A DNA stretch of 64,000 nt, from positions 1 through 64,000 of IMG/VR virus record IMGVR_UViG_3300020122_000238; one strand, 5' to 3'. The notes under the pieces are model-generated. The model was not told the DNA's origin, searched no databases, and saw nothing but the letters and a program-made list of their open reading frames with translations. The stretch's first letter is position 1; each line of letters begins with the position of its first letter. Positions 6,721-18,185 of the stretch are shown in pieces. Made by a program: the position numbers and the translations under genes.

Positions 6721-7087
6721 GCTGAGGGCAAAACTGACGAAGCTCCAGTCCGAAGTCTCTCTCAACAAGCTCACGACTTCATTTTCGATCGAGGAACGTA
6801 CGCAAGGCGGAAAGAAGAGCACCTTCTACTCCGCCACGGCCAGTCGGGGACACGGGGCTGAGGTAACCCAGTTCCACGCTGACGCCCCTTCGATTGGCTT
6901 CAACCCCGAAGAGGTCCGGGTGGTTCGGTGCCTTCTCGCCAAGCACGTTGTGGGGGCCACCTACGACGACGCGGCCAAGCGGGGGATTCTTGGTCGTAAG
7001 CAGGCGGCGGAGGAAGCCAAAGCCATCCTCAACGCCTACGATGAGGCCATCGTCAAGATCCTCACCCCCAACGAGACCAAGGCATGA
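6653..7087 (+). CDS. Hypothetical protein
   Basis: 144-aa ORF with GGTGTA-N10-ATG upstream and ATGA coupling to the next gene. Confidence 0.7.
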   Translation: MNETKTEPDSQKQRSPLDSLNPELRAKLTKLQSEVSLNKLTTSFSIEERTQGGKKSTFYSATASRGHGAEVTQFHADAPSIGFNPEEVRVVRCLLAKHVVGATYDDAAKRGILGRKQAAEEAKAILNAYDEAIVKILTPNETKA

Positions 7088-7857
7088 CCCCCGAGCAAAT
7101 CAAGGTCATTTACAGTACCATCACCAGGTTGACGATCGATCTCCACTCGGACCCTTCGTCGTTGGGTCCGAAGTACCTACAGGACGTCACGGCGACCTGC
7201 AACAACTACAAGAACGAGGTCTCGGGGATCCTCATTCAGTTGATGCAACAGAAGCACCTCGTCACCCGAGAGCTTCAGACTCGGATGTCCGCCTACCAGG
7301 TCTCCTTCGATGACCTTCTGGCGAACAACCAGCACGTCAGCCGGCTCCCGAACATCGAGGATCGCAAGGCAACGGCCAACGTGATGCTCCGGGAAGATCG
7401 TCAGGCCATCGCTCGGCTCGAAGCGGAGCAGAAGGACCTGGAGTCGATGGAGAAGGTCGTCCGACATCGCCACAAGGAGCTGTCGGACACCATGGCTGCC
7501 ATCAAGGTTCAACGATCGCTTATCAGGGATGAGCTTGACACGAAGTCCTTCTATGGGGACGAGCGGATCAACAAGCTGCCTGGAAGCGGTGGTGGATCGT
7601 CCTCTCCTCTCGGAGGGGATGACGTCAACGAAGAGGAGCTGCTTCTTCTCTTGGAGGGGGACACTGCAAAGGCTGTGGAGCCTGATGCAGCCGAGCCTGA
7701 GCCCGTGGTCGTGGTTCCCACCACGAATCGGTCTCCTGTTCTCCCCTCGGTCACGGCCGCAGAGACCTCCGACGAGCAAGCCATTCAGAACTTCCTCGGA
7801 GCCTCGCCGGCAATCGTCACTGAAGACGATTACGAGGACGTATTTTCAGGACTTTGA
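7084..7857 (+). CDS. Coiled-coil protein, possibly a UvsY-like recombination mediator
   Basis: Helical N-terminal half, acidic tail, located beside the SSB-like and RecA genes; function inferred from context only. Confidence 0.5.
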   Translation: MTPEQIKVIYSTITRLTIDLHSDPSSLGPKYLQDVTATCNNYKNEVSGILIQLMQQKHLVTRELQTRMSAYQVSFDDLLANNQHVSRLPNIEDRKATANVMLREDRQAIARLEAEQKDLESMEKVVRHRHKELSDTMAAIKVQRSLIRDELDTKSFYGDERINKLPGSGGGSSSPLGGDDVNEEELLLLLEGDTAKAVEPDAAEPEPVVVVPTTNRSPVLPSVTAAETSDEQAIQNFLGASPAIVTEDDYEDVFSGL

Positions 7858-8009
7858 TACGTCCGTAGGGTACAATCGGCGACCGGCAAAAACTGAGTCC
7901 TCTCAGTCGGAGTCGGTCGCAACAAGGGTTCAAACGTCGTCCTTCGCTACCCGTCGTAACCGACACATGTAGCAGTGAAGGCGATTTCACACCGAAAGAG
8001 TGCAGAGCG

Positions 8010-8952: not shown

Positions 8953-9004
8953 GGTGCAACCATGCTGAAATGGCCCAACATTGGGGCACTCTAGGTTCCG
9001 AATC

Positions 9005-9658
9005 GTGATTGTTTTGGGCTTGGATCCGTCTTTGACTGCCCTGGGATGGTGTGTACACGACTCTGAGGCTGAAGGTCCTGAACGCATTGTTGGTCGAGGC
9101 TTGATCTCGACCGTCGCGAAGGACATCTTCGTTCAACGCTACATGACGCTTCGTGAGGGCGTGGGTGATCTGCTCGACAGATACTCCGCGATTGAAGCCG
9201 TGGGCGTGGAATCCCCTGCATTCGGAGAGCAGTGGTCTCCAGGGGCTTATGCCCTTTTCATCATGGTGAACGAGGCGATCTACACTCGACGCAAGGATGT
9301 GGTGTATTTCGATCCGGGCACTTTGAAAATGCTTACGAAGGTCGACCCCAAAATCAGATTGGGGAAGATGTTCAAAGCAGATATGGTGGACGCTGCCAAA
9401 GCGGACACTGGTCTCAAAGGGCGTATCACACATGATGAAGCAGATGCCTATCATGTGGCTCGGTTTGCCGCTCGTTTCTGGCTATTTCTCAAAGGGGCCA
9501 TCCTCGAAGACAGCCTATCTCCCGCAGAATATCAAGCATTCGCCAAGATACACACCTTCACAAAAGGGGATCGGGCGGGTCAGACGGTGATGCAGGGGGC
9601 GGCATTCAAAGAGAATCGTCGTTTCTTCCGCTTCTCTCAACTTGATACACCCAAGTAA
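9005..9658 (+). CDS. ruvC: RuvC-like Holliday junction resolvase
   Basis: VLGLDPSLTALGW, VGVES, HDEADA acidic motifs. Confidence 0.85.
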   Translation: MIVLGLDPSLTALGWCVHDSEAEGPERIVGRGLISTVAKDIFVQRYMTLREGVGDLLDRYSAIEAVGVESPAFGEQWSPGAYALFIMVNEAIYTRRKDVVYFDPGTLKMLTKVDPKIRLGKMFKADMVDAAKADTGLKGRITHDEADAYHVARFAARFWLFLKGAILEDSLSPAEYQAFAKIHTFTKGDRAGQTVMQGAAFKENRRFFRFSQLDTPK

Positions 9659-9681: not shown

Positions 9682-10116
9682 GTGAAGCCTCTGGCGTCTT
9701 TCTACGATCACCCTCGTACGAAATTGGGGGTGGGAGTCAACTGCAAGCAGTGCATCAGTGAGAAAGGCCGAGGAACATACGATCCTCAAAAAGGACGCGA
9801 TAGTTACCAGAGGCGCCGGACGAGTATTCTTCTTCGGGTGAAGAATACTCGTGATACTCGTAAACACGAGTACATAACTCTCCTCGGAGGGCGGTGTAGA
9901 GATTGTGGGATTGCCCCTGGTAGTGAGTGGCCTATTGACGTGTTCGATTTCCATCATCTTGGAGTAGAAGACAAGGATATGGAGATAGGTCACATGCTTT
10001 CAAAAAAGAACCAAGAACAAGTTCGAGCTGAAGTTCTGAAGTGTGTTTTGCTGTGTGCAACCTGTCATCGACGCAGACACGCATGGCCAAATTTCTCCCA
10101 ACTGGAGTCTAAATGA
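9682..10116 (+). CDS. HNH endonuclease (homing-type); start uncertain
   Basis: CRDC...FDFHH...CVLLCATCHRRRH; N-terminal KPLASFY...CKQC knuckle; lower GC than its neighbours. Confidence 0.8.
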   Translation: MKPLASFYDHPRTKLGVGVNCKQCISEKGRGTYDPQKGRDSYQRRRTSILLRVKNTRDTRKHEYITLLGGRCRDCGIAPGSEWPIDVFDFHHLGVEDKDMEIGHMLSKKNQEQVRAEVLKCVLLCATCHRRRHAWPNFSQLESK

Positions 10117-11429
10117 CGACTGCGACGACCACGAAAGACAAGAAGGCCAAGGCTCCTGTTTCCTCTGCATCGGCAGTGGCGACCCTTGCCAGGGCCATGA
10201 TCCTCAAGACCACCAAGCAGCGGCCGATGACGGCCCAGCAAACGACTCTACCTCACGTTCCTTCGGGTTCGGTCATTCTCGACACGAGCATCGGGGGTTC
10301 GCGAACGGCAGATGGGAAGGGCTTCGTTTGCCCCGGTTACCCCCGGCGTCGCATCACGGAAATCTACGGTCCGGAGTCGAGTGGCAAGACGACGGTGGCT
10401 CTCACGGCCATCGCGAACGTCCAGAAGAATGGGGGGACGGCGATGTTTCTGGACTTCGAGCACGCCCTTCACCACGGCTACGCGAAGCAGATTGGGGTCC
10501 AGTTCGAAGACCTCCTTCTCTACGCTCCCGACACGATGGAAGATGGCTTCAAGATGATTCTTGTCGGCATCATGGCTGGCGTGGATATCATCGTCGTCGA
10601 CTCGGTCGCCTCGATGGTTCCTGCTCTGGAGTTGGAGAAGAAGATCGAGGACACCGCCAAGATCGGTGCGGTGGCGAAGAAGATGAGTGAGACCCTACCC
10701 AAGCTTGTCTTGTGGCTTGCCAAGTACCCGACGAAGGGGGCAGGGGAGAGCAAGATCTCTGACCCCGAGCGTCTCGGGACGGCCCTTATCCTGCTCAACC
10801 AGGAGCGAGCCACCATCAGCACGGGTGGTGGTCATGGTGCTCCTGAAGCCAACACGGCTGGAGGAAAGGCTCTCAAGTACTTCGCCTACGTTCGGCTGCG
10901 TCTCGCTCGGATTCTCTCCGAGCGTGTCGAGCGGAAGGACCCCGCCACGGGGAAGATCAAGAAGTATCCCTTTGGCAACCTCACCTCCGTGAAGGTCATC
11001 AAGGCAAAGGCCGACGCAAAGCAGGGACACGAAGCTACGATCTTCATTCGCTACGGCTTCGGGATCGACGACCTCTACAGCATCATCATGGCGGCTGAGG
11101 CCAACGGGATCATCAAGCGTGAGGGCTCGAAGTACACCTGTGCAGGCGAGTCCTTCATGGGGAAGGACAAGCTGCGCGCACACTTGATCGCCAACCCCAA
11201 GCTCGCAGCGGAGATCAAGGGGAAGGTTGTCGAGGCCATCTCTTCGGCAATCCCGACGGCGATCCCGGACGAGGATATCTCGGATGAGGACGCGATGCAG
11301 GCGGACCTCAGTGGCGAGCTGGGGGACGACGATGATGATGCGTCTGGGGGTGGGACGCAGGAAATCACGATCGACACTGACGATCCGATCATGGAAGATT
11401 CGGCCGAGGACGAGTCCGGCGGCGAATGA
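10113..11429 (+). CDS. recA: RecA recombinase
   Basis: EIYGPESSGKTT, DFEHAL, VVDSVA, LLNQER, GGKALKYFA; acidic tail. Confidence 0.95.
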   Translation: MTTATTTKDKKAKAPVSSASAVATLARAMILKTTKQRPMTAQQTTLPHVPSGSVILDTSIGGSRTADGKGFVCPGYPRRRITEIYGPESSGKTTVALTAIANVQKNGGTAMFLDFEHALHHGYAKQIGVQFEDLLLYAPDTMEDGFKMILVGIMAGVDIIVVDSVASMVPALELEKKIEDTAKIGAVAKKMSETLPKLVLWLAKYPTKGAGESKISDPERLGTALILLNQERATISTGGGHGAPEANTAGGKALKYFAYVRLRLARILSERVERKDPATGKIKKYPFGNLTSVKVIKAKADAKQGHEATIFIRYGFGIDDLYSIIMAAEANGIIKREGSKYTCAGESFMGKDKLRAHLIANPKLAAEIKGKVVEAISSAIPTAIPDEDISDEDAMQADLSGELGDDDDDASGGGTQEITIDTDDPIMEDSAEDESGGE

Positions 11430-12649
11430 TCTCGGTCGAGGTCTGCAACTTTCAATCGATTGAGCGTGTTTCATTCCAGATTGACGGCTTCACAGCTCTT
11501 GTGGGCCGGTCGAACATCGGGAAGAGCGCGCTCATTCGAGCGATTCGTTGTGCTCTCACTGGAGCGCCCGTGGCGGCATTCGTCCGTCACGGGCGCTCTT
11601 GCGCCCGCAAGCTGAAGAAGCAGAAGACGTGCAAGTGCCATGTTTCTGTGCATCTCCAGTCTGTGGACTTCGATCTCCTTTGGGAGAAGGGCGATTCGAT
11701 CAATCGTTACGTCTTCAATGGAGCGGAGTATCCCGCCGCCGAACGAGGGATGCCGGACTTCCTGATTGCGACCTTCAACGAGGTCAAAGTGGGGGACAAG
11801 AACGTCCTCCTTCAGGTCTCCGATCAATTCAACCCCATCTTCCTTCTCGACCAATCCCCTGGTGTGGTCGCGGATGTCCTCTCGGACATGGCCAAGCTCG
11901 ATCAGGTCAATCTCGCCATGCGGATGGTCGAGAAGGACAGGAGGGAGGCTACGGCTACACGGAAGGTCAGGGAGAAGGACGTTATCGAGGCTACGGCCCA
12001 GCTTGCGTCGTATGACGGGCTCGACACAGCTCTTCGAGACGTCAAGACCGTCAAGACGAAGCTGGGGGTTGTCCAGGCGACTCAAGCCAAGGTCACACAG
12101 CTCGACTACTTCATTGACGGGCGAGCTGCTCTCGAATCGCGGGTGGCGAGTCTTGAGGGTGTGGTTGCTCAGGCACCCCCAAATCCAACGGAGCTACAGG
12201 AAGGTCAGAAGACCTTCTCTCTTCTCCAGAGGCTATGTCTCCAGAACGCCACCCGAAGGGCATCCCTGGCTTCTCTCGATGGGGTGAGCAAGATCGAGAT
12301 CCCGAGTGTGACGGATCTTCGGACCTTCGCGGAGGTCACCTTTCAGCTCCTCGAAGGGTGGATCACCCGCCTTCGAGGGTTCAAGGAGAGCATGGGTCGT
12401 CTCAAGGATGTAAAAACCCTTGAGATGCCTTCCCTTGCTTCGGTTCATGCCGCGCACAAAAAACACGAAAACCTGATCGACTTCGCGGGGGATTACGAGG
12501 TGACTCTTCGTAATATCGCCACTTTGGAACGGGGGTGCAGCCTCGTCTATCTGGAAGAAGAGGTCCTCAATCGGGAGTGGGCTGAGCTGGGTGTTTGTTC
12601 GACCTGTTCCCGTCCTTTTCATTCCGATTCTCATCTCGAACAGGTGTAG
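11426..12649 (+). CDS. sbcC: Rad50/SbcC-like ATPase, N-terminal half
   Basis: NFQS, Walker A GRSNIGKS, Q-loop-like SDQF, coiled coil, C-terminal CSTC zinc hook; no Walker B. Confidence 0.85.
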   Translation: MISVEVCNFQSIERVSFQIDGFTALVGRSNIGKSALIRAIRCALTGAPVAAFVRHGRSCARKLKKQKTCKCHVSVHLQSVDFDLLWEKGDSINRYVFNGAEYPAAERGMPDFLIATFNEVKVGDKNVLLQVSDQFNPIFLLDQSPGVVADVLSDMAKLDQVNLAMRMVEKDRREATATRKVREKDVIEATAQLASYDGLDTALRDVKTVKTKLGVVQATQAKVTQLDYFIDGRAALESRVASLEGVVAQAPPNPTELQEGQKTFSLLQRLCLQNATRRASLASLDGVSKIEIPSVTDLRTFAEVTFQLLEGWITRLRGFKESMGRLKDVKTLEMPSLASVHAAHKKHENLIDFAGDYEVTLRNIATLERGCSLVYLEEEVLNREWAELGVCSTCSRPFHSDSHLEQV

Positions 12650-12660
12650 AGTGAGTGTGG

Positions 12661-13641
12661 ATGCCTCGACTATCCTTCCTTTTTAGGACCGACACCCACG
12701 TAGCGGATCGGAGCCCCGCGTCTTGGAAAGCAGACTACCCGTCGGAGATTTGGTCGAATCTCGAACAAATCGGGCAATTCGCGAAGAAGTTCGAGGTGAC
12801 GGCTGTACTCGACGGGGGGGACTTCTTTCACGTCAAGGCCGCAAGTCGGAATCCACATGGCCTGGTTGAGCGAGCTGCTCGGATCCATCAGGCCTACCCA
12901 TGCCCTGTGTGGTCCGTCGAGGGGAATCACGACATTGCCTACAACAACCTGGACACCCTGGCGAAGCAACCTCTCGGTGTGCTCCTAGCAACGGGGGTCT
13001 TCCACCATCTTCGAGAGCAGGTCTTTGAGGATGGTGGGGTTCGAGTACGGGTGGTGGGGGTTCCCTACAGCCCCCATCGAACCGTGGCGGAGCTGAAGAG
13101 GATCAAGAAGAAGCCGGGGGACGACTTCCTCATCGCTGTCGTTCACGCCCTCGCAGCTCAGGAACCACCCCCCAACGTCGAGGGCTTCTTCGGTGAGCCT
13201 GTCTTCCGGTACGGCGACCTCGTGACCGAGGATGGCCCGGATTCTTGGTGCTTCGGGCACTGGCACAAGGACCAGGGGATCGTGACCGTGGGGGGCAAGC
13301 AGTTCGTCAACCAAGGGGCTGTGAGCCGAGGGGCTCTCGTTAGAGAGAACACCTTGAGGACCCCCCAGGTGTCTCACATCGTGATCGAAAACGGTGTGCT
13401 TCGGATCTGGCCTGTCCCGCTGATCGTTGCCCCGGCGGAGGATGTCTTTGACATCGAACGCAAGGAACGAGAAGAGGCCGAAGACACGGCGATCGATGCC
13501 TTTGCAGCTCGTATCAAGGCCGACGCGATGTTCGATCCCTCCTTGGGGATCGAAGAATCACTGAATAGTCTTGACTATGCCCGTGATGTGCGTGATCTCG
13601 CACAGGGCTACTTGGAACGAGCGCGGGCGGAGGTTGGCTGA
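12661..13641 (+). CDS. sbcD: Mre11/SbcD-like metallophosphoesterase nuclease
   Basis: DTH, GGDFF, GNHD, GHWH motifs; adjacent to sbcC. Confidence 0.88.
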   Translation: MPRLSFLFRTDTHVADRSPASWKADYPSEIWSNLEQIGQFAKKFEVTAVLDGGDFFHVKAASRNPHGLVERAARIHQAYPCPVWSVEGNHDIAYNNLDTLAKQPLGVLLATGVFHHLREQVFEDGGVRVRVVGVPYSPHRTVAELKRIKKKPGDDFLIAVVHALAAQEPPPNVEGFFGEPVFRYGDLVTEDGPDSWCFGHWHKDQGIVTVGGKQFVNQGAVSRGALVRENTLRTPQVSHIVIENGVLRIWPVPLIVAPAEDVFDIERKEREEAEDTAIDAFAARIKADAMFDPSLGIEESLNSLDYARDVRDLAQGYLERARAEVG

Positions 13642-14546
13642 TGTATCTGTCGTATTCTGGGTTCAAATCGTACGACTCCTGTCCCAAGGCGTACTGGTAT
13701 CGCTACGTGGGCAAGACACCTCTCTCCGAACCGGAGAACAAGGTCAACTCCATCTACGGCAGCACGGTGGGCCGGCTCTTCGAGCTGTTCTACGCCAACC
13801 AGATCTGGAAGCAGTCGAACACAATCGAGACTCTTTTGGGGATGGTCGAGCCCGAGCTAGACGACACCATTCAGAAAGAGCGCCGGAACGGGGTCATCGA
13901 CTACACGGACAAGAGGTCGAACTACGCATCTCGGGATGCCCTGGTTGCGGACATCCGAGCGGCTATTCCCCGAGGGATTGCCATCATCAGGCACCACCGG
14001 CTGATCGGTGCTGATGCAGCGGCGGAGGTCAAGTACGACACGATGATCGAGGGGCACACGATTGGGGGTCGTGCTGATTTCGTTCTTCGTAGGGTTGCCC
14101 CCCACCGGGACCGAGTTCTACTCGATGGGAAGGGATCCCGGCATCGGGAGAAATACGTCGATGATCGCCAGCTCGTGTGGTACGCGATGCTTCATCGAAT
14201 TCGTCATGGATCTCCCCCCGATCGTTTGGGGTTCGTCTTCTGGCGGTATGAACCGGAGGAGAGTCTGGATTGGATCAACTTCACCGCGGCGGACCTCGAC
14301 GGGCTCCTTGCCCATGTCCTCAGCACGGTGCGGAAGATTGATGGGGGTATCAACACCCTCATCTCGGGGAGCAAGGAAGTCCAGAAACAAGTGATGGGGG
14401 ATGTGTTCCAGGCTCAACCTGGACAGGGCAAGTGCAAGCTCTGCTCCTATCTCGCAATCTGCCCTGAAGGCCAGAGCTTCACAGCGAAACATCAGATCCC
14501 CGTCTACGCTGGAGAGGGTGTAGAAGACGTGGGCATCGGGGATTGA
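13641..14546 (+). CDS. PD-(D/E)xK Cas4/RecB-like exonuclease
   Basis: LSYS...CPK, GRAD, LDGK, QLxWY, C-terminal CxxC-x5-C (Fe-S-type Cys set). Confidence 0.85.
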   Translation: MYLSYSGFKSYDSCPKAYWYRYVGKTPLSEPENKVNSIYGSTVGRLFELFYANQIWKQSNTIETLLGMVEPELDDTIQKERRNGVIDYTDKRSNYASRDALVADIRAAIPRGIAIIRHHRLIGADAAAEVKYDTMIEGHTIGGRADFVLRRVAPHRDRVLLDGKGSRHREKYVDDRQLVWYAMLHRIRHGSPPDRLGFVFWRYEPEESLDWINFTAADLDGLLAHVLSTVRKIDGGINTLISGSKEVQKQVMGDVFQAQPGQGKCKLCSYLAICPEGQSFTAKHQIPVYAGEGVEDVGIGD

Positions 14547-14556
14547 AAGGACACGT

Positions 14557-14829
14557 ATGACTCCTGACGAGATCAAGAAGAAGATCGAGGACCTATCGAG
14601 GCGAACCGAAGTCGTCTCGAAGAAGAAGTCGCAGTACGAGGGGCAGCTCCAGAAGGTCAAGGAAGACCTCGCGGATCTGGTCACCGAGGTGAAGGCTGCG
14701 GGCTACGACCCCAAGACTCTCTCCGCCGAGAGGGACAAGGCGGAGGCAAGTCTCCTTCAGGAGATTGCCGAGTACGAGACCAAGTTGCTGGCCGTGGAGA
14801 CTTCCTTGGCCGGCTACGACAAGAAGTAA
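14557..14829 (+). CDS. Small coiled-coil protein
   Basis: 90 aa heptad-rich, AGGA RBS. Confidence 0.75.
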   Translation: MTPDEIKKKIEDLSRRTEVVSKKKSQYEGQLQKVKEDLADLVTEVKAAGYDPKTLSAERDKAEASLLQEIAEYETKLLAVETSLAGYDKK

Positions 14830-14851
14830 CGACTCCCAAAATGAGGATGGA

Positions 14852-16132
14852 ATGAAAATCACGCTCAAGCTCGCCGACCTGATCAAGGCCCTCGCCATCG
14901 TTTCGATCGTCCCCCCGCGTCCCCTGACCCCGGCGGGCGGGGCCGGCTACCTCTTCGTCATCCGAATGGGAGGCCTCTGCTCGATCTACTCCCGCGACGC
15001 TCTTCACGTTGCTCGCGCCACGATCTCCTGTGATGAGAAGGAGACCGAGGGGTCCTTCATCTTCCCCTCGGAGTTCACGAGTGGTTTCCGTTTCCTTCGG
15101 GATGACGACATCACGATCGAGTCCAAGGTGGACTCGGACAACTTCACGGTTTCCTGGAGCACGAACTCGGGAGCTGGGGCGGATCGCGCGAGCTTCGATC
15201 CGAAGCTCATGGCCTCGTGTGATCGGGATCTCGCCGGAGCCAAGGATGAACGCTCCTTCCCCGTGGGCCTATTCAAGGAGGCGATGACGCTGGCCAAGCC
15301 CTTCCTTGGGAAGGCCGACGACACGCGGATCCCGGAGCACTTCAAGACGCTCCAGCTCTTCGACAAGTCCAAGCCCGAGTGGGAGAAGGGTTCCGGGCAT
15401 CTCTTCGCTGCGAACACCTTCCAGGCGTTCTGGTTCTACAGCGCTGCCTTTGTCGACAAGGGGTTCTCGATCCACGTCCAGCACATGTCCTTCTTCACAA
15501 GCTTCCTCGCGAAGTCGGATGGAGAGGTGAAGCTCCTGACGGGCGACAACATGATCTTCGCCGTCGACTCCAAGGGGAACGCGCTCGGGTGGGCGAAGCA
15601 CGAGTCCGTTCACGGGAAGTTCTCCTACTACTCGAAGGCGATGGACAAGCTCATCCTCGGGCTCCCCAAGTCGCTGACGGTGGACGCGCTCCGCTTCATG
15701 CGCTCAGAGCTGGATTCCAAGGAAGACAAGATCACTCTGGTCGTCAACGAGTTCCGTGACGTCGAGGTGGGCGAGAAGGTGCAACGCCAAGCAACGATGC
15801 TCTTCCGAGTGGCCGAGACGAAGGGCAAGGCTCGGAGCTTCCCGCTCCCGGCTGTCGTCATCGACGGCTCCGAGGAGCAAGAGATCACCTTCAACGTCAA
15901 CATCGACCGGCTCATCGACCTCATCGACGGCGTGAAGGGCATGGACGTCCAGCTTCGGATCGCGGTCATCAAGGCCGACGACAAGTCCCCCAAGGAACGG
16001 GCCATGTTCCGCACTATCGACGAGTTCCTCATGGACGACAACGGCAAGGTGGTCGGGGACATCACGGCGGAAAACCGGCCGGAAGGGTCGCACGAGTGCC
16101 GCGTAACCAGGTACATGCCCTCGAAGGACTGA
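14852..16132 (+). CDS. dnaN: DNA polymerase sliding clamp (beta-clamp-like)
   Basis: N-terminus MKITLKLADLIKALAIV resembles DnaN; about 430 aa; ends RYMP; dnaX nearby. Confidence 0.6.
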   Translation: MKITLKLADLIKALAIVSIVPPRPLTPAGGAGYLFVIRMGGLCSIYSRDALHVARATISCDEKETEGSFIFPSEFTSGFRFLRDDDITIESKVDSDNFTVSWSTNSGAGADRASFDPKLMASCDRDLAGAKDERSFPVGLFKEAMTLAKPFLGKADDTRIPEHFKTLQLFDKSKPEWEKGSGHLFAANTFQAFWFYSAAFVDKGFSIHVQHMSFFTSFLAKSDGEVKLLTGDNMIFAVDSKGNALGWAKHESVHGKFSYYSKAMDKLILGLPKSLTVDALRFMRSELDSKEDKITLVVNEFRDVEVGEKVQRQATMLFRVAETKGKARSFPLPAVVIDGSEEQEITFNVNIDRLIDLIDGVKGMDVQLRIAVIKADDKSPKERAMFRTIDEFLMDDNGKVVGDITAENRPEGSHECRVTRYMPSKD

Positions 16133-16134
16133 CC

Positions 16135-16371
16135 ATGCTTGTACGACCTAAATTGTGGCTTGAGGCGGAACGCATTACGACTGCGAAACAAGCGTCAAAA
16201 GTCACGATTCTTCCCCAAGTCATTGGCCCGCGGGGTTGGTCTGGTTTTGTTGGGGACTGGATCATCACGGCTCCGAATGGGGATACTTTCATTCGCCCAG
16301 ATGCCACTTTTGCAAAGGACTACGAGGTCAAGCATTGGTGGGATTTGTTGACCAAGGTGTGGGGGTTCTAG
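16135..16371 (+). CDS. Small phage protein (GDWII...F..DYE family)
   Basis: Motif VGDWIITAPNGDTFIRPDATFAKDYE is typical of a common small phage protein family. Confidence 0.65.
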   Translation: MLVRPKLWLEAERITTAKQASKVTILPQVIGPRGWSGFVGDWIITAPNGDTFIRPDATFAKDYEVKHWWDLLTKVWGF

Positions 16372-16375
16372 AAGC

Positions 16376-17035
16376 ATGAAAGACTGGGCTGCGAGGACTG
16401 AAGCTCTCGCATTGAAAGCAGCTCGTCTCCAGGCCCTCCGCGATCAAAAGCGGGCGGATCTGGAGTCGAAAAGCGCGGAAGTGACGGCTCTCTCGGCCCA
16501 GATCGAGAAGCTCTTCAAGGTGGGGGAGCTTCTCCGCATCCTTTTGGACAAGCTCGTCACGGACAGGGTTCGGACCCTGGAGGCTCTTGTCTCTGAGGGT
16601 CTGAAGACCATCTTCTTCGATCAGAAGCTCTCGTTCGAGGCAGCGATCGGACAGGCTCGGAACAGGGTCTCCATCGACTTCTTCATTCGTCAGGGAGACG
16701 AAGAGGCCGGCGTTCGTGGGCATCCCCTTGATTCTTTTGGGGGTGGTCCTGCGAGTATCGTTTCCTTGATTCTCCGTCTCCTTCTACTCCTCCGCTTGAA
16801 GCGGTTCCCCGTGCTCCTACTCGACGAGACGCTTGCGGCAGTCTCGGATGAGTACGTGGATGCAGCCGGACGTTTCCTTCAACGTCTCGCGGAATCGACC
16901 AACATCGACATTTTGTTTGTCACCCATAAGCAAGCCTTCCTCGAACACGCGAACATCGCGTACCAAGGATCTGAAGAGCTGGGTGCGGATGAGACGACGT
17001 GGCTAGACATTCGCCGCCTTCGGAGTCATCGGTGA
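16376..17035 (+). CDS. Rad50/SbcC-like ATPase, C-terminal half
   Basis: Short coiled coil, signature SFGGG, Walker B/D-loop LLLDETLAAVS, H-loop FVTH; no Walker A. Confidence 0.85.
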   Translation: MKDWAARTEALALKAARLQALRDQKRADLESKSAEVTALSAQIEKLFKVGELLRILLDKLVTDRVRTLEALVSEGLKTIFFDQKLSFEAAIGQARNRVSIDFFIRQGDEEAGVRGHPLDSFGGGPASIVSLILRLLLLLRLKRFPVLLLDETLAAVSDEYVDAAGRFLQRLAESTNIDILFVTHKQAFLEHANIAYQGSEELGADETTWLDIRRLRSHR

Positions 17036-17589
17036 GAACGCAATCTGAAATCATCGGTCGCATTCGTTTCCTGCTTGTGAAGGAGCTGGAGGATCGTGTG
17101 ACGGCTGCCAGGGAGAGGTTGCCCCACCGCTGCATGTACAACTACAGGCAACCCCTCGATGTTCGTCGAACTATCGACGACGAGCCCAACCCGAACTACA
17201 ACCGAATCACGATGGGGTCTGGGCTTGGGGGGCGCCACCTTCCCGTCCTTCAGACCATCGGTCTCTGCATGTACGGGGTCGAGGACATCATCTCCGCCGA
17301 GATCCGGATCTGTGAGGATCCCTCGGATGCACAGCAGTGTCCCTTGTTCGAGCCCACCCTCAACAAGCACCAGTTGTGGACGGAGTACGCGGAACAGATC
17401 GATAGTCCTGATTGGTTGCGAGAGAACATGCCCGAGGTTCACGGCCTCGCGTGGGCCCTGGGAGATGGAATGCCTCGGATCCCTTGGTGGGCACGTCTGT
17501 GGTTCCGCCTGACTCAGATTCGACCGGAGCCCATTCGAATCCCTACCGATCTCGTGAAGTACCTCCCGGACCCCAGCTCCCTGCAATGA
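17032..17589 (+). CDS. Hypothetical Cys-containing protein
   Basis: GTGA and ATGA overlaps at both ends. Confidence 0.65.
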   Translation: MRTQSEIIGRIRFLLVKELEDRVTAARERLPHRCMYNYRQPLDVRRTIDDEPNPNYNRITMGSGLGGRHLPVLQTIGLCMYGVEDIISAEIRICEDPSDAQQCPLFEPTLNKHQLWTEYAEQIDSPDWLRENMPEVHGLAWALGDGMPRIPWWARLWFRLTQIRPEPIRIPTDLVKYLPDPSSLQ

Positions 17590-18185
17590 GCTTCTCAATC
17601 CTGGAGCAAGTGCTGGTTGTCGACCGGCATCGACAGAGGGCTTCAGGTAAGCAGGGGTTCTCTACCCCCTACCTGTGCACTGCGAAGGTGATCCCCAGCT
17701 CGGTCCCATTGGTGGTCACCAATGCCCGGGGTGGCTTTGTTGGCACAAGGCCTTCCAAGGATGGGGACGCGAGGTATGGCTTCTCCCTCCTCTCAGAGGA
17801 AGGCGATCCTGATGTGCTCGTCCTTGCACTCTATCGGGATGTCCGGGGTCTTTCGACTCAGGGCAACTGGGGGAATCGGTGTAGCTCGGTCCTCGTGGCC
17901 ATGGAGCGTCTCCGAAAATCAGGACTCGAACCGAAGTCCCTCATTCTCTCCTCGGCCCTCCTCAAGGAGGTCTGCGGGGAGAAGGCGGCGTCGGTGAAGG
18001 GTGGATTCGTGACGACCCTGGAGGGCGGTCTCCAGGTCTTCGTTGCAGCTCTTCCGGATGGAGCAGCTCTTGTGCTTCCTTCGCCTGAAAAACTAGGGTT
18101 CTACACGCGAGTGCGTGATTACGTGGGGGTCATGATTCGGCGAGCTGACCAGACGATCATGGTGGTCGGCCGTGACCTGGCTTGA
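17586..18185 (+). CDS. Hypothetical protein with a weak MCP-like C-terminus
   Basis: ATGA overlap; C-terminal half aligns by eye with the MCP at 45652. Confidence 0.55.
   Translation: MSFSILEQVLVVDRHRQRASGKQGFSTPYLCTAKVIPSSVPLVVTNARGGFVGTRPSKDGDARYGFSLLSEEGDPDVLVLALYRDVRGLSTQGNWGNRCSSVLVAMERLRKSGLEPKSLILSSALLKEVCGEKAASVKGGFVTTLEGGLQVFVAALPDGAALVLPSPEKLGFYTRVRDYVGVMIRRADQTIMVVGRDLA

What the first reader, a model, noticed from the sequence alone, without database searches (positions are those of the whole stretch)
11426..17035. Rad50/SbcC split at the zinc hook into separate genes, possibly three pieces
Seen: 11426-12649 has Walker A and a coiled coil and ends just after a CSTC hook. 16376-17035 has only about 75 aa of coil plus signature, Walker B and H-loop. 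Five genes lie between them, including sbcD and a 90-aa pure coiled coil (14557-14829). Established: Rad50/SbcC/T4 gp46 are single chains folding back at the hook. Inference: the ATPase head assembles in trans, and the 90-aa protein may supply missing returning coil. No split-intein motifs are visible at the break ends.
Basis: partly seen in the sequence, partly recalled or inferred. Interest (0 to 1): 0.6.

Follow-up and report, generated by a model that had tools for sequence, protein, structure and literature searches.

The report
Phage Rad50 naturally split at hook
A huge phage encodes its Rad50/SbcC DNA-repair ATPase as two separate proteins cut just after the zinc hook, always with a small helical hairpin protein nearby; the same layout recurs in many phages and seems not to have been described, so it offers a natural test of what the Rad50 coiled coil and hook are for.

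Summary
Window 11426-12649 encodes a 407-aa Rad50 N-half: Walker A, Q-loop, coil, and an invariant CxxC 13 residues from the end. Window 16376-17035 encodes a 219-aa C-half: about 70 aa of coil, then FGGG signature, Walker B and H-loop.

The window is the start of a 275-kb huge-phage record, and both genes are under purifying selection. A profile search found 3245 cluster representatives of the C-half; the best 150 are all 88-324 aa.

A complex model joins the halves into one ABC head plus an antiparallel coil (N 145-220 with C 1-68). Its ipSAE is 0.69 against 0.00 for the best control.

- The N-half beyond residue 220 has no partner in the C-half. It is a tandem array of 41-42-aa repeats, with 2-5 copies across the family.
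- The 90-aa protein is a helix-turn-helix hairpin. It sits beside the C-half in every hook-bearing split lineage examined, including 0305phi8-36, phBC6A51 and Mvi-JY20. Its length does not follow repeat number.
- The fifth intervening ORF is an insertion specific to this genome.

Verdict: a new variant of Mre11-Rad50. Trans assembly of the head is well supported. The hairpin's role and the geometry of the distal arm are unresolved.

The parts
11426..12649 (+). Rad50/SbcC N-half (407 aa): ABC lobe I, ascending coil, tandem repeats, terminal zinc hook. Its start overlaps the recA stop (ATGA).
   Evidence: (phrog_16465 E 3.5e-18).
11504..11527 (+). Walker A / P-loop, GRSNIGKS (residues 27-34).
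   Evidence: G27, G32 and K33 are invariant in 59 homologues.
11588..11638 (+). H55-x3-C59-x9-C69-x-C71 cluster in lobe I; a possible second metal site specific to this family.
   Evidence: All four residues are invariant in alignment A1. The cluster is absent in LR745208 and 0305phi8-36 gp8. Metal binding was not tested.
11858..12085 (+). Proximal ascending coil (residues 145-220), modelled as antiparallel with C-half residues 1-68.
   Evidence: Heptad-spaced contacts in the complex model; dN/dS 0.04.
12158..12532 (+). Three tandem repeats of 41-42 aa (245-285, 286-327, 328-369), each a Pro-containing linker (GVxxIxVP) followed by a heptad-bearing helix.
   Evidence: hhalign between units gives 97% probability, E 6e-12 to 3e-11. 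Copy number is 2-5 across the family. dN/dS 0.22.
12596..12607 (+). CxxC zinc-hook motif (C391-S-T-C394), 13 aa before the stop.
   Evidence: Invariant in 59 of 59 homologues, consensus LGVCPTC. T4 gp46 has GGLCPTC at residue 288 of 560.
12655..13641 (+). SbcD/Mre11-like nuclease (328 aa) carrying the DxH, GDxxH, GNHD and GHWH motifs.
   Evidence: Pfam Metallophos E 8e-10; phrog_100 SbcD-like. dN/dS 0.03.
13641..14546 (+). PD-(D/E)XK (Cas4-like) nuclease, a conserved member of the block.
   Evidence: Pfam PDDEXK_1 E 1.2e-15; conserved gene order.
14557..14829 (+). 90-aa helix-turn-helix hairpin protein with a central AGYDPK turn; candidate third subunit.
   Evidence: Homologues lie next to the C-half in LR745208, 0305phi8-36 (gp7), phBC6A51 (BC1854), vB_BboS-125 (gp34) and Mvi-JY20. 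It belongs to virus-only clusters of unknown function.
14852..16132 (+). Beta-clamp-like protein (426 aa) lying between the hairpin gene and the C-half gene. Probably not part of the Rad50 machine.
   Evidence: phrog_947 E 6.5e-5 here; E 1e-22 for the LR745208 orthologue. It is absent from this position in phBC6A51, vB_BboS-125 and Mvi-JY20.
16133..16375 (+). Genome-specific insertion holding a small ORF (listed as 16096-16371; an ATG lies at 16135). Not part of the conserved module.
   Evidence: Absent from 97%-identical relatives L007 and L008 and from all other relatives.
16376..17035 (+). Rad50/SbcC C-half (219 aa): descending coil (1-68) and ABC lobe II.
   Evidence: phrog_15167 E 2e-18.
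16736..16747 (+). Signature motif F121-G-G-G124.
   Evidence: Invariant in 53 homologues.
16811..16828 (+). Walker B, VLLLDE (146-151).
   Evidence: D150 and E151 are invariant.
16922..16927 (+). H-loop, T183-H184.
   Evidence: T183 is invariant and H184 is conserved in at least 90%.

Best explanation
This is a phage Mre11-Rad50 (SbcCD, T4 gp46/47-type) end-processing machine whose Rad50 subunit is made as separate polypeptides.

The N-half carries Walker A, the Q-loop, the ascending coil, a tandem-repeat arm and the CxxC hook. The C-half carries a short descending coil, the signature motif, Walker B and the H-loop.

Modelled: the two halves associate non-covalently. Their lobes form one ABC head, and N 145-220 pairs antiparallel with C 1-68.

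Inferred from established Rad50 mechanism: two such heterodimers, together with an SbcD dimer, sandwich ATP between the Walker A of one head and the FGGG of the other. The two N-half CxxC motifs share a zinc ion.

Inferred from repeat modularity and the lack of any covarying partner: the distal N-half arm (residues 221-388, 2-5 repeats of 41-42 aa) has no intramolecular return strand. It most likely pairs with the same arm of the second N-half as a parallel rod clasped by the hook. I rate this at about 0.35.

Inferred from conserved linkage: the 90-aa hairpin is a third dedicated component, probably acting at or near the hook-proximal helix. I rate physical membership at about 0.45.

The overall confidence given for this explanation refers to 'a split Rad50 whose head assembles in trans and works with SbcD'.
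For: Motifs are complementary and invariant in each half.

The complex model gives ipSAE 0.69 in three runs against 0.00 for the best control. The mark was reached by 58 of 80 solved and 2 of 110 mismatched pairs (roughly, because my own alignments were used). Runs share at least 94% of contacts and partner pLDDT is 81. The interface combines a shared beta-sheet (N 15-29 with C 177-186) and heptad-spaced coil contacts.

The N-half lobe matches Rad50, SMC and RecF N-lobes. The best Foldseek hit is 1f2u_C (E 4.9e-3, prob 1.00), and VIA Z is 8-10.

Relatives' halves map onto the two ends of the phage SbcC-like profile phrog_77: gp8 onto 222-649/967 and gp5 onto 869-954/967.

SbcD, RecA, a RuvC-like protein and a PD-(D/E)XK nuclease are adjacent. 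Synteny is conserved in 9 family loci and 5 other lineages. Selection is purifying.

There is only one N-half and one C-half in the 275-kb record.

The best 150 of 3245 C-half relatives are all half-sized.

Repeat evidence: unit homology; copy number; periodicity in other lineages.

The distal arm is modelled as an extended rod with no compact-bundle match.

From my own knowledge: Hopfner et al. 2000 reconstituted an active P. furiosus Rad50 head from separately expressed N and C segments (PDB 1F2T/1F2U).
Against: There is no biochemical evidence. The complex score is a model's own confidence, and Rad50 and SMC heads are solved, so the pass may reflect likeness only.

Pfam SMC_N and AAA_23 hits for the window's own halves fall below their curated cut-offs. 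Neither half hit phrog_77 directly. PDB profile hits are weak: SMC at E 2.4e-4 for the C-half, and the Walker A region only for the N-half.

The distal-arm geometry and zinc binding are untested. Both AF2 monomer models have low pTM (0.37 and 0.33).

The record is only about 58% complete by CheckV, so a partner or a full-length Rad50 elsewhere in the genome cannot be excluded.
Confidence: 0.8

Rival explanations
1. A three-chain Rad50. The hairpin unfolds or docks along the N-half and supplies the missing descending strand between the hook and the start of the C-half coil.
For: The hairpin is linked to the C-half in every hook-bearing split lineage examined, and is absent from hookless Magritte, T4 and T5.

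In Mvi-JY20 the lengths roughly add up. The N-half coil is about 140 aa, the C-half coil about 70 aa, and the two hairpin helices about 80 aa together (my estimate from the sequences).

Hairpin helix 1 plus its turn resembles the pre-hook helix plus GVCP (hhalign probability 67%, E 5e-5; reversed control 0.8%).
Against: Hairpin length stays at 87-95 aa while the N-half varies by -1, +1 or +2 units of 41 aa. One copy therefore cannot span the distal arm in most members.

The near-invariant Pro of the central G-x-x-P turn argues for a folded hairpin rather than a single long strand.

In L009 the hairpin is fused in frame to the clamp-like protein.

Confidence: 0.25
2. The hairpin is a replication or clamp accessory, or some other neighbour, that only happens to lie in the block. 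Rad50 is then a two-chain protein and the distal arm is self-sufficient.
For: In the window's family and in LR745208 the hairpin lies directly upstream of the clamp gene, and in L009 it is fused to the clamp. No length covariation with the N-half is seen.
Against: In phBC6A51, vB_BboS-125 and Mvi-JY20 no clamp gene is nearby, yet the hairpin gene still lies directly upstream of the C-half gene. In 0305phi8-36 it lies between gp8 and gp5.
Confidence: 0.3
3. A broken or decaying Rad50 gene, or an assembly artefact, in which a single gene was disrupted by inserted genes.
For: Five ORFs separate the halves, and one small insertion in the interval is recent.
Against: There are hundreds of homologues of the same half sizes on independent contigs and in cultured phages. 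Order is conserved, dN/dS is 0.06-0.12, and the catalytic motifs are invariant.
Confidence: 0.02
4. The halves are joined after translation, by a split intein, or at the RNA level into a single chain.
For: None was found.
Against: Only 9-17 variable residues follow the CxxC, and the C-half begins with coil, so there is no room for an intein of about 100 plus 35 aa. Four to five genes on the same strand lie between the halves. The order N...C varies in distance and content between lineages, and the halves are 39 kb apart in Magritte.
Confidence: 0.01
5. Not a Rad50 equivalent but another SMC-like ABC machine, such as an RloC-, RecN- or Lamassu-like system, with a different task.
For: Sequence links to Rad50 proper are weak. 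The best PDB profile hit for the C-half is bacterial SMC. N-lobe matches include SMC, RecF, RecN, OLD and GajA.
Against: An SbcD-type nuclease is always in the block, and is fused to the N-half in 0305phi8-36. The hook is CPTC as in T4 gp46. Relatives hit the phage SbcC-like profile. The block lies in a RecA / RuvC / helicase / clamp-loader module.
Confidence: 0.08

Closest known systems
T4 gp46/gp47 (phage Rad50/Mre11) and E. coli SbcCD
   Same: An ABC head with Walker A and Q-loop in one lobe and signature, Walker B and H-loop in the other. An antiparallel coil leaves the head. The hook is G-x-C-P-T-C, as in T4 gp46 (GGLCPTC). A Metallophos nuclease partner is encoded nearby. The genes sit in a recombination/replication module, and in T4 the clamp gene 45 is also a neighbour of gene 46.
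   Different: T4 gp46 is one 560-aa chain with the hook in the middle, at residue 288. Here the chain ends 13 aa after the hook, and lobe II plus about 70 aa of coil is a separate gene 3.7 kb downstream. The distal arm is a tandem-repeat array with no return strand. A dedicated hairpin protein accompanies it; none was found in T4 or T5.
Engineered two-chain Rad50 catalytic domain (P. furiosus, PDB 1F2T/1F2U)
   Same: N and C segments on separate chains assemble into an ATP-binding head. 1f2u_C is the best Foldseek match for the N-half.
   Different: That construct is a laboratory truncation without coil or hook. Here the separation is natural, is conserved, and keeps the hook on the N chain.
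Mre11/Rad50 fusion proteins (Mimivirus R555; 0305phi8-36 gp8), Yoshida et al. 2011, PMC3175470
   Same: 0305phi8-36 gp8 belongs to the same N-half family (phrog_16465, E 6e-167) and ends KCPTC + 17 aa. The paper noted that one P-loop NTPase segment of SbcC 'was not observed' in the phage protein.
   Different: The missing segment is in fact encoded separately as gp5 (phrog_15167, E 2e-98), three genes downstream. In the window SbcD is not fused to the N-half.
PHROG families phrog_16465 ('exonuclease') and phrog_15167 ('ATPase'); GenBank names 'Exonuclease SbcC' (BC1852) and 'Chromosome segregation ATPases' (BC1855)
   Same: The window's halves are members of these families, at E 3.5e-18 and 2e-18.
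   Different: The databases treat them as unrelated families. I found no annotation or paper that links them as two halves of one ATPase.

Membership tests
Rad50/SbcC/gp46 (SMC-like ABC ATPase of the Mre11-Rad50 complex) | A complete ABC head: Walker A and Q-loop, plus signature, Walker B, D-loop and H-loop. | tested here: met
   All motifs are present and invariant, but they are divided between two genes. The lobes are modelled as one head.
Rad50/SbcC/gp46 (SMC-like ABC ATPase of the Mre11-Rad50 complex) | An antiparallel coiled coil emerging from the head. | tested here: met
   N 145-220 pairs antiparallel with C 1-68 through heptad-spaced contacts in the complex model. This is a model only.
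Rad50/SbcC/gp46 (SMC-like ABC ATPase of the Mre11-Rad50 complex) | A CxxC zinc hook at the far end of the coil. | tested here: inconclusive
   The CxxC is invariant (59 of 59), with the T4-like consensus GVCPTC. Zinc binding and dimerisation could not be tested.
Rad50/SbcC/gp46 (SMC-like ABC ATPase of the Mre11-Rad50 complex) | A single polypeptide that folds back at the hook, so both coil strands come from one chain. | tested here: not met
   A stop follows the hook after 13 aa, and the C-half is a separate gene. The best 150 C-half relatives are all 88-324 aa. N-half residues 221-388 have no return strand in the C-half.
Rad50/SbcC/gp46 (SMC-like ABC ATPase of the Mre11-Rad50 complex) | A cognate Mre11/SbcD nuclease partner. 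| tested here: met
   An SbcD-like Metallophos gene is adjacent. It is conserved in every locus and fused to the N-half in 0305phi8-36. Physical binding was not tested.
Rad50/SbcC/gp46 (SMC-like ABC ATPase of the Mre11-Rad50 complex) | Sequence-family membership (Pfam SMC_N / AAA_23; phage SbcC-like phrog_77). | tested here: inconclusive
   The window's halves score below the Pfam cut-offs (SMC_N 19.5 and 22.2 bits against 40) and do not hit phrog_77. The relatives gp8, gp5, the LR745208 N-half and Magritte gp2 do hit it, at E 9e-17 to 9e-5.
Split-intein-joined protein | An N-intein (about 100 aa) after the N-extein and a C-intein (about 35 aa, ending HN followed by C/S/T) before the C-extein. 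| tested here: not met
   Tails of 9-17 variable residues follow the CxxC, and the C-half starts with coil.

The most novel reading that the evidence does not exclude
A three-component Rad50. The hook-bearing arm is a single-stranded repeat rod of variable length (2-5 units of 41-42 aa) that zips in parallel with its twin and is clasped by zinc. A cysteine-less 'pseudo-hook' hairpin, possibly derived from the hook region itself, is an obligatory third subunit. Only a stalk of about 70 residues connects arm and head as a two-chain coil. If true, hook-to-head communication in an Mre11-Rad50 machine does not need a continuous intramolecular antiparallel coiled coil.
Probability: 0.3. Interest if true: 0.75.

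Novelty: new variant of a known kind. Interest (0 to 1): 0.62.

Why it matters
How the Rad50 coiled coil and zinc hook control the ATPase-nuclease head some tens of nanometres away is a long-standing question. Laboratory answers rely on truncations and hook mutants.

Here evolution has cut the chain exactly at the hook. It left the hook on a one-stranded, modular repeat arm and added a small hairpin protein, and this layout has been kept in a very large set of phages. Several of them are cultured: 0305phi8-36, phBC6A51, vB_BboS-125 and Mvi-JY20.

That gives a tractable natural system for three questions: which coil features are dispensable, whether arm length matters, and what the hairpin does.

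It also corrects annotation. The 'missing' ATPase segment of the 0305phi8-36 Mre11-Rad50 fusion is gp5, and thousands of 'chromosome segregation ATPase' or 'ABC transporter ATPase' calls of about 220 aa on phage contigs are Rad50 C-halves.

Tried and rejected
- The search for related loci with the single C-half found only two near-identical contigs. These were useful for dN/dS and for showing the insertion, but not for distant synteny.
- Profile searches of PDB sequences gave only weak SMC, Rad50 and OLD hits. A spurious leucine-rich-repeat hit was caused by the Leu-periodic repeats.
- Foldseek on the distal-arm model found nothing. VIA-align found only long single helices, with no Z of 8 or more. 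The arm's quaternary arrangement is therefore unresolved.
- I tested whether hairpin or C-half length tracks N-half repeat number. It does not.
- tblastn with 0305phi8-36 gp7 found only itself.
- The Atlas search for the hairpin gave only unnamed viral clusters.
- A self-BLAST for repeats returned nothing, and a first autocorrelation script timed out. A vectorised version worked.
- The hairpin profile gave one weak hit in SPO1, with stop codons inside it. I judged it spurious.
- I rejected the pseudogene/artefact, split-intein and independent-function readings. The reasons are given under the rival explanations.
Hairpin-N-half, N-half homodimer and SbcD binding were therefore not tested.
- No read mapping was attempted.


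Full report
**Setting.** The window is the first 64 kb of a 275.3-kb IMG/VR virus record, estimated about 58% complete, so it is a huge phage. Positions 9-21 kb form a same-strand replication/recombination module:
- RuvC-like protein, 8981-9658
- RecA/UvsX, 10113-11429
- the N-half, 11426-12649
- SbcD-like nuclease, 12655-13641
- PD-(D/E)XK nuclease, 13641-14546
- a 90-aa helical protein, 14557-14829
- a beta-clamp-like protein, 14852-16132
- a small ORF, 16096-16371
- the C-half, 16376-17035
- Toprim and clamp-loader genes downstream

- The 407-aa N-half has Walker A (GRSNIGKS, 27-34) and a Q-loop (Q130). Helices are predicted from 145 to 388. CSTC lies at 391-394, 13 residues from the stop.
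- In an alignment of 59 homologues, G27, G32, K33, Q130, C391 and C394 are invariant. The hook consensus is LGVCPTC. T4 gp46 has GGLCPTC, but in the middle of a 560-aa chain.
- The 219-aa C-half begins with a helix of about 70 residues. It carries an invariant FGGG signature, Walker B (D150, E151) and the H-loop (T183, H184).
- Neither protein could bind and hydrolyse ATP alone. The N-half lacks the signature, Walker B and H-loop, and the C-half lacks a P-loop.

**It is a real, conserved architecture.**
- Word-based searches found 209 C-half and 485 N-half homologues. All those listed are half-sized, 178-243 aa and 363-489 aa respectively, and many pairs share a contig.
- The exhaustive profile search with the C-half alignment found 3245 cluster representatives at E <= 1e-3 and 1378 at E <= 1e-10. 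The best 150 are all 88-324 aa, and none is a full-length Rad50.
- Gene order is RecA, N-half, SbcD, PD-(D/E)XK, an 87-95-aa protein, clamp, C-half. It is kept in every family locus fetched.
- Against a 97%-identical relative, dN/dS is as follows:

| Gene or region | dN/dS |
|---|---|
| N-half, whole | 0.12 |
| N-half head | 0.06 |
| N-half proximal coil | 0.04 |
| N-half repeats | 0.22 |
| C-half | 0.06 |
| SbcD | 0.03 |

- The record holds no second N-half or C-half.

**The same split occurs in distant and cultured phages**:

| Phage | N-half | C-half |
|---|---|---|
| Uncultured 485-kb LR745208 | ends DCPVC + 13 aa | 211 aa, 7 kb downstream |
| Bacillus phage 0305phi8-36 | gp8, an SbcD-N-half fusion ending KCPTC + 17 aa | gp5 |
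| Bacillus prophage phBC6A51 | BC1852, ends GVCPLC + 13 aa | BC1855 (SbcD is BC1857) |
| vB_BboS-125 | gp32 | gp35 |
| Microcystis phage Mvi-JY20 | 332 aa, ends CSQC + 14 aa | 205 aa |
| Microbacterium phage Magritte | gp155, no hook | gp2, 39 kb from gp155 |

- Relatives' halves map to the two ends of the phage SbcC-like profile phrog_77.
- Yoshida et al. 2011 (PMC3175470) noted that one SbcC P-loop segment 'was not observed' in the 0305phi8-36 fusion. That segment is gp5.
- I found no paper describing a naturally split Rad50 or SbcC.

**Trans assembly of the head.**
- The complex model of the N-half with the C-half scored ipSAE 0.69 (three runs, 0.68-0.69). The best of three controls scored 0.00.
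- The pass mark was reached by 58 of 80 solved complexes and by 2 of 110 mismatched pairs. These counts hold only roughly here, because my own alignments were used.
- Runs agree in at least 94% of contacts, and partner pLDDT is 81.
- The interface is a shared sheet (N 15-29 with C 177-186), contacts around Walker B (N 37, 130 and 131 with C 148), and a heptad-spaced antiparallel coil (N 145-220 with C 1-68).
- Because Rad50 and SMC heads are solved, the pass shows likeness rather than proof of binding.
- The N-lobe model matches Rad50, SMC and RecF N-lobes. The best Foldseek hit is 1f2u_C at E 4.9e-3, and VIA Z is 8-10.
- From my own knowledge, 1F2U is itself a two-chain reconstituted Rad50 head.

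- The C-half coil covers the N-half only up to about residue 220.
- Residues 245-369 are three tandem repeats of 41-42 aa. Each is a GVxxIxVP linker followed by a heptad-bearing helix. Profile-profile comparison gives 97% probability and E 6e-12 to 3e-11. The proximal coil is unrelated, at under 5% probability.
- Copy number varies: 2 units in proteins of 363-367 aa, 3 in about 405 aa, 4 in 447-452 aa and 5 in 487-489 aa.
- A similar 41-47-aa periodicity appears in the distal N-half of every hook-bearing lineage, but not in T4 gp46.
- Modelled alone, the arm is locally confident (pLDDT 89) with low pTM (0.33). It matches only long single helices and no compact bundle.
- Odd and even unit changes occur without any change in the C-half or the hairpin. 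A zig-zag fold-back or a fixed-length return strand is therefore unlikely.
- A parallel pairing of two N-half arms, clasped by Zn(Cys)4, fits best. This is inference.

**The 90-aa protein.**
- It is a helix-turn-helix with a conserved central G-[Y/V/I]-x-P turn; the Pro is near-invariant.
- Homologues lie just upstream of the C-half, or of clamp plus C-half, in LR745208, 0305phi8-36 (gp7; BLASTP E 2e-4), phBC6A51 (BC1854), vB_BboS-125 (gp34) and Mvi-JY20.
- No homologue was found in hookless Magritte, T4 or T5.
- Its first helix and turn weakly resemble the pre-hook helix plus GVCP (hhalign probability 67%, E 5e-5; reversed control 0.8%).
- In one relative it is fused in frame to the clamp-like protein.
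- Linkage to the split, hook-bearing Rad50 is therefore strong. Its role as a 'return coil' is neither shown nor excluded.

**Other rivals.** The pseudogene, intein-splicing and non-Rad50 readings are addressed under the rival explanations. All are disfavoured.

**Limits.**
- No experiment has been done and there is one complex model.
- The window's own Pfam scores are below the curated cut-offs.
- The genome record is incomplete.
- Zinc binding, SbcD binding, N:N pairing and hairpin binding are all untested.

**Verdict.** This is a natural, ancient and widespread variant of Mre11-Rad50. The Rad50 chain is cut at the zinc hook, it has a modular one-stranded hook arm, and a dedicated hairpin protein accompanies it.

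Noticed in passing
window 16133-16375: An insertion of about 235 nt between the clamp gene and the C-half gene carries a 78-91-aa ORF (MLVRPKLW...). It is absent from 97%-identical relatives L007 and L008 and from all other relatives, so it looks like a recently acquired small gene. It has no Pfam or PHROG match.
   Followed up: partly
window 11588-11638 (N-half residues 55-71): An invariant H55-x3-C59-x9-C69-x-C71 cluster sits in ATPase lobe I of this family only. It is absent in LR745208 and 0305phi8-36 gp8. It may be a second, structural metal site in the head.
   Followed up: partly
L009 8532-10037: In one relative the hairpin and the clamp-like protein form a single 501-aa open frame, reading ...AAYDKK-LGEQ-MKFK.... 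The stop codon between them has been lost.
   Followed up: partly
L017 (vB_BboS-125, NC_048735) locus 6971-7954: An SbcD-like ORF (tblastn E 6e-19) lies in a gap of about 1 kb between gp36 and gp37 that carries no annotation in the RefSeq record.
   Followed up: no
L001 (0305phi8-36) gp5, gp7, gp8: gp5, annotated 'chromosome segregation ATPase', is the Rad50 C-half that was reported as missing from the gp8 Mre11-Rad50 fusion. gp7 is the hairpin homologue.
   Followed up: yes
window 16999-17589 and 17412-18185: Two conserved ORFs of unknown function (196 and 257 aa) follow the C-half, with overlapping ends, and are syntenic in all family loci. The 196-aa ORF had no Pfam or PHROG match; the 257-aa ORF was not scanned.
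   Followed up: no
L021 (T4) genes 45, 46, 46.1, 46.2, 47: In T4 the clamp gene 45 is also a near neighbour of rad50 (gene 46), and two small ORFs (46.1 and 46.2) lie between genes 46 and 47. The whole-genome hairpin-profile search of T4 returned no match, so they are not hairpin homologues by that test.
   Followed up: partly
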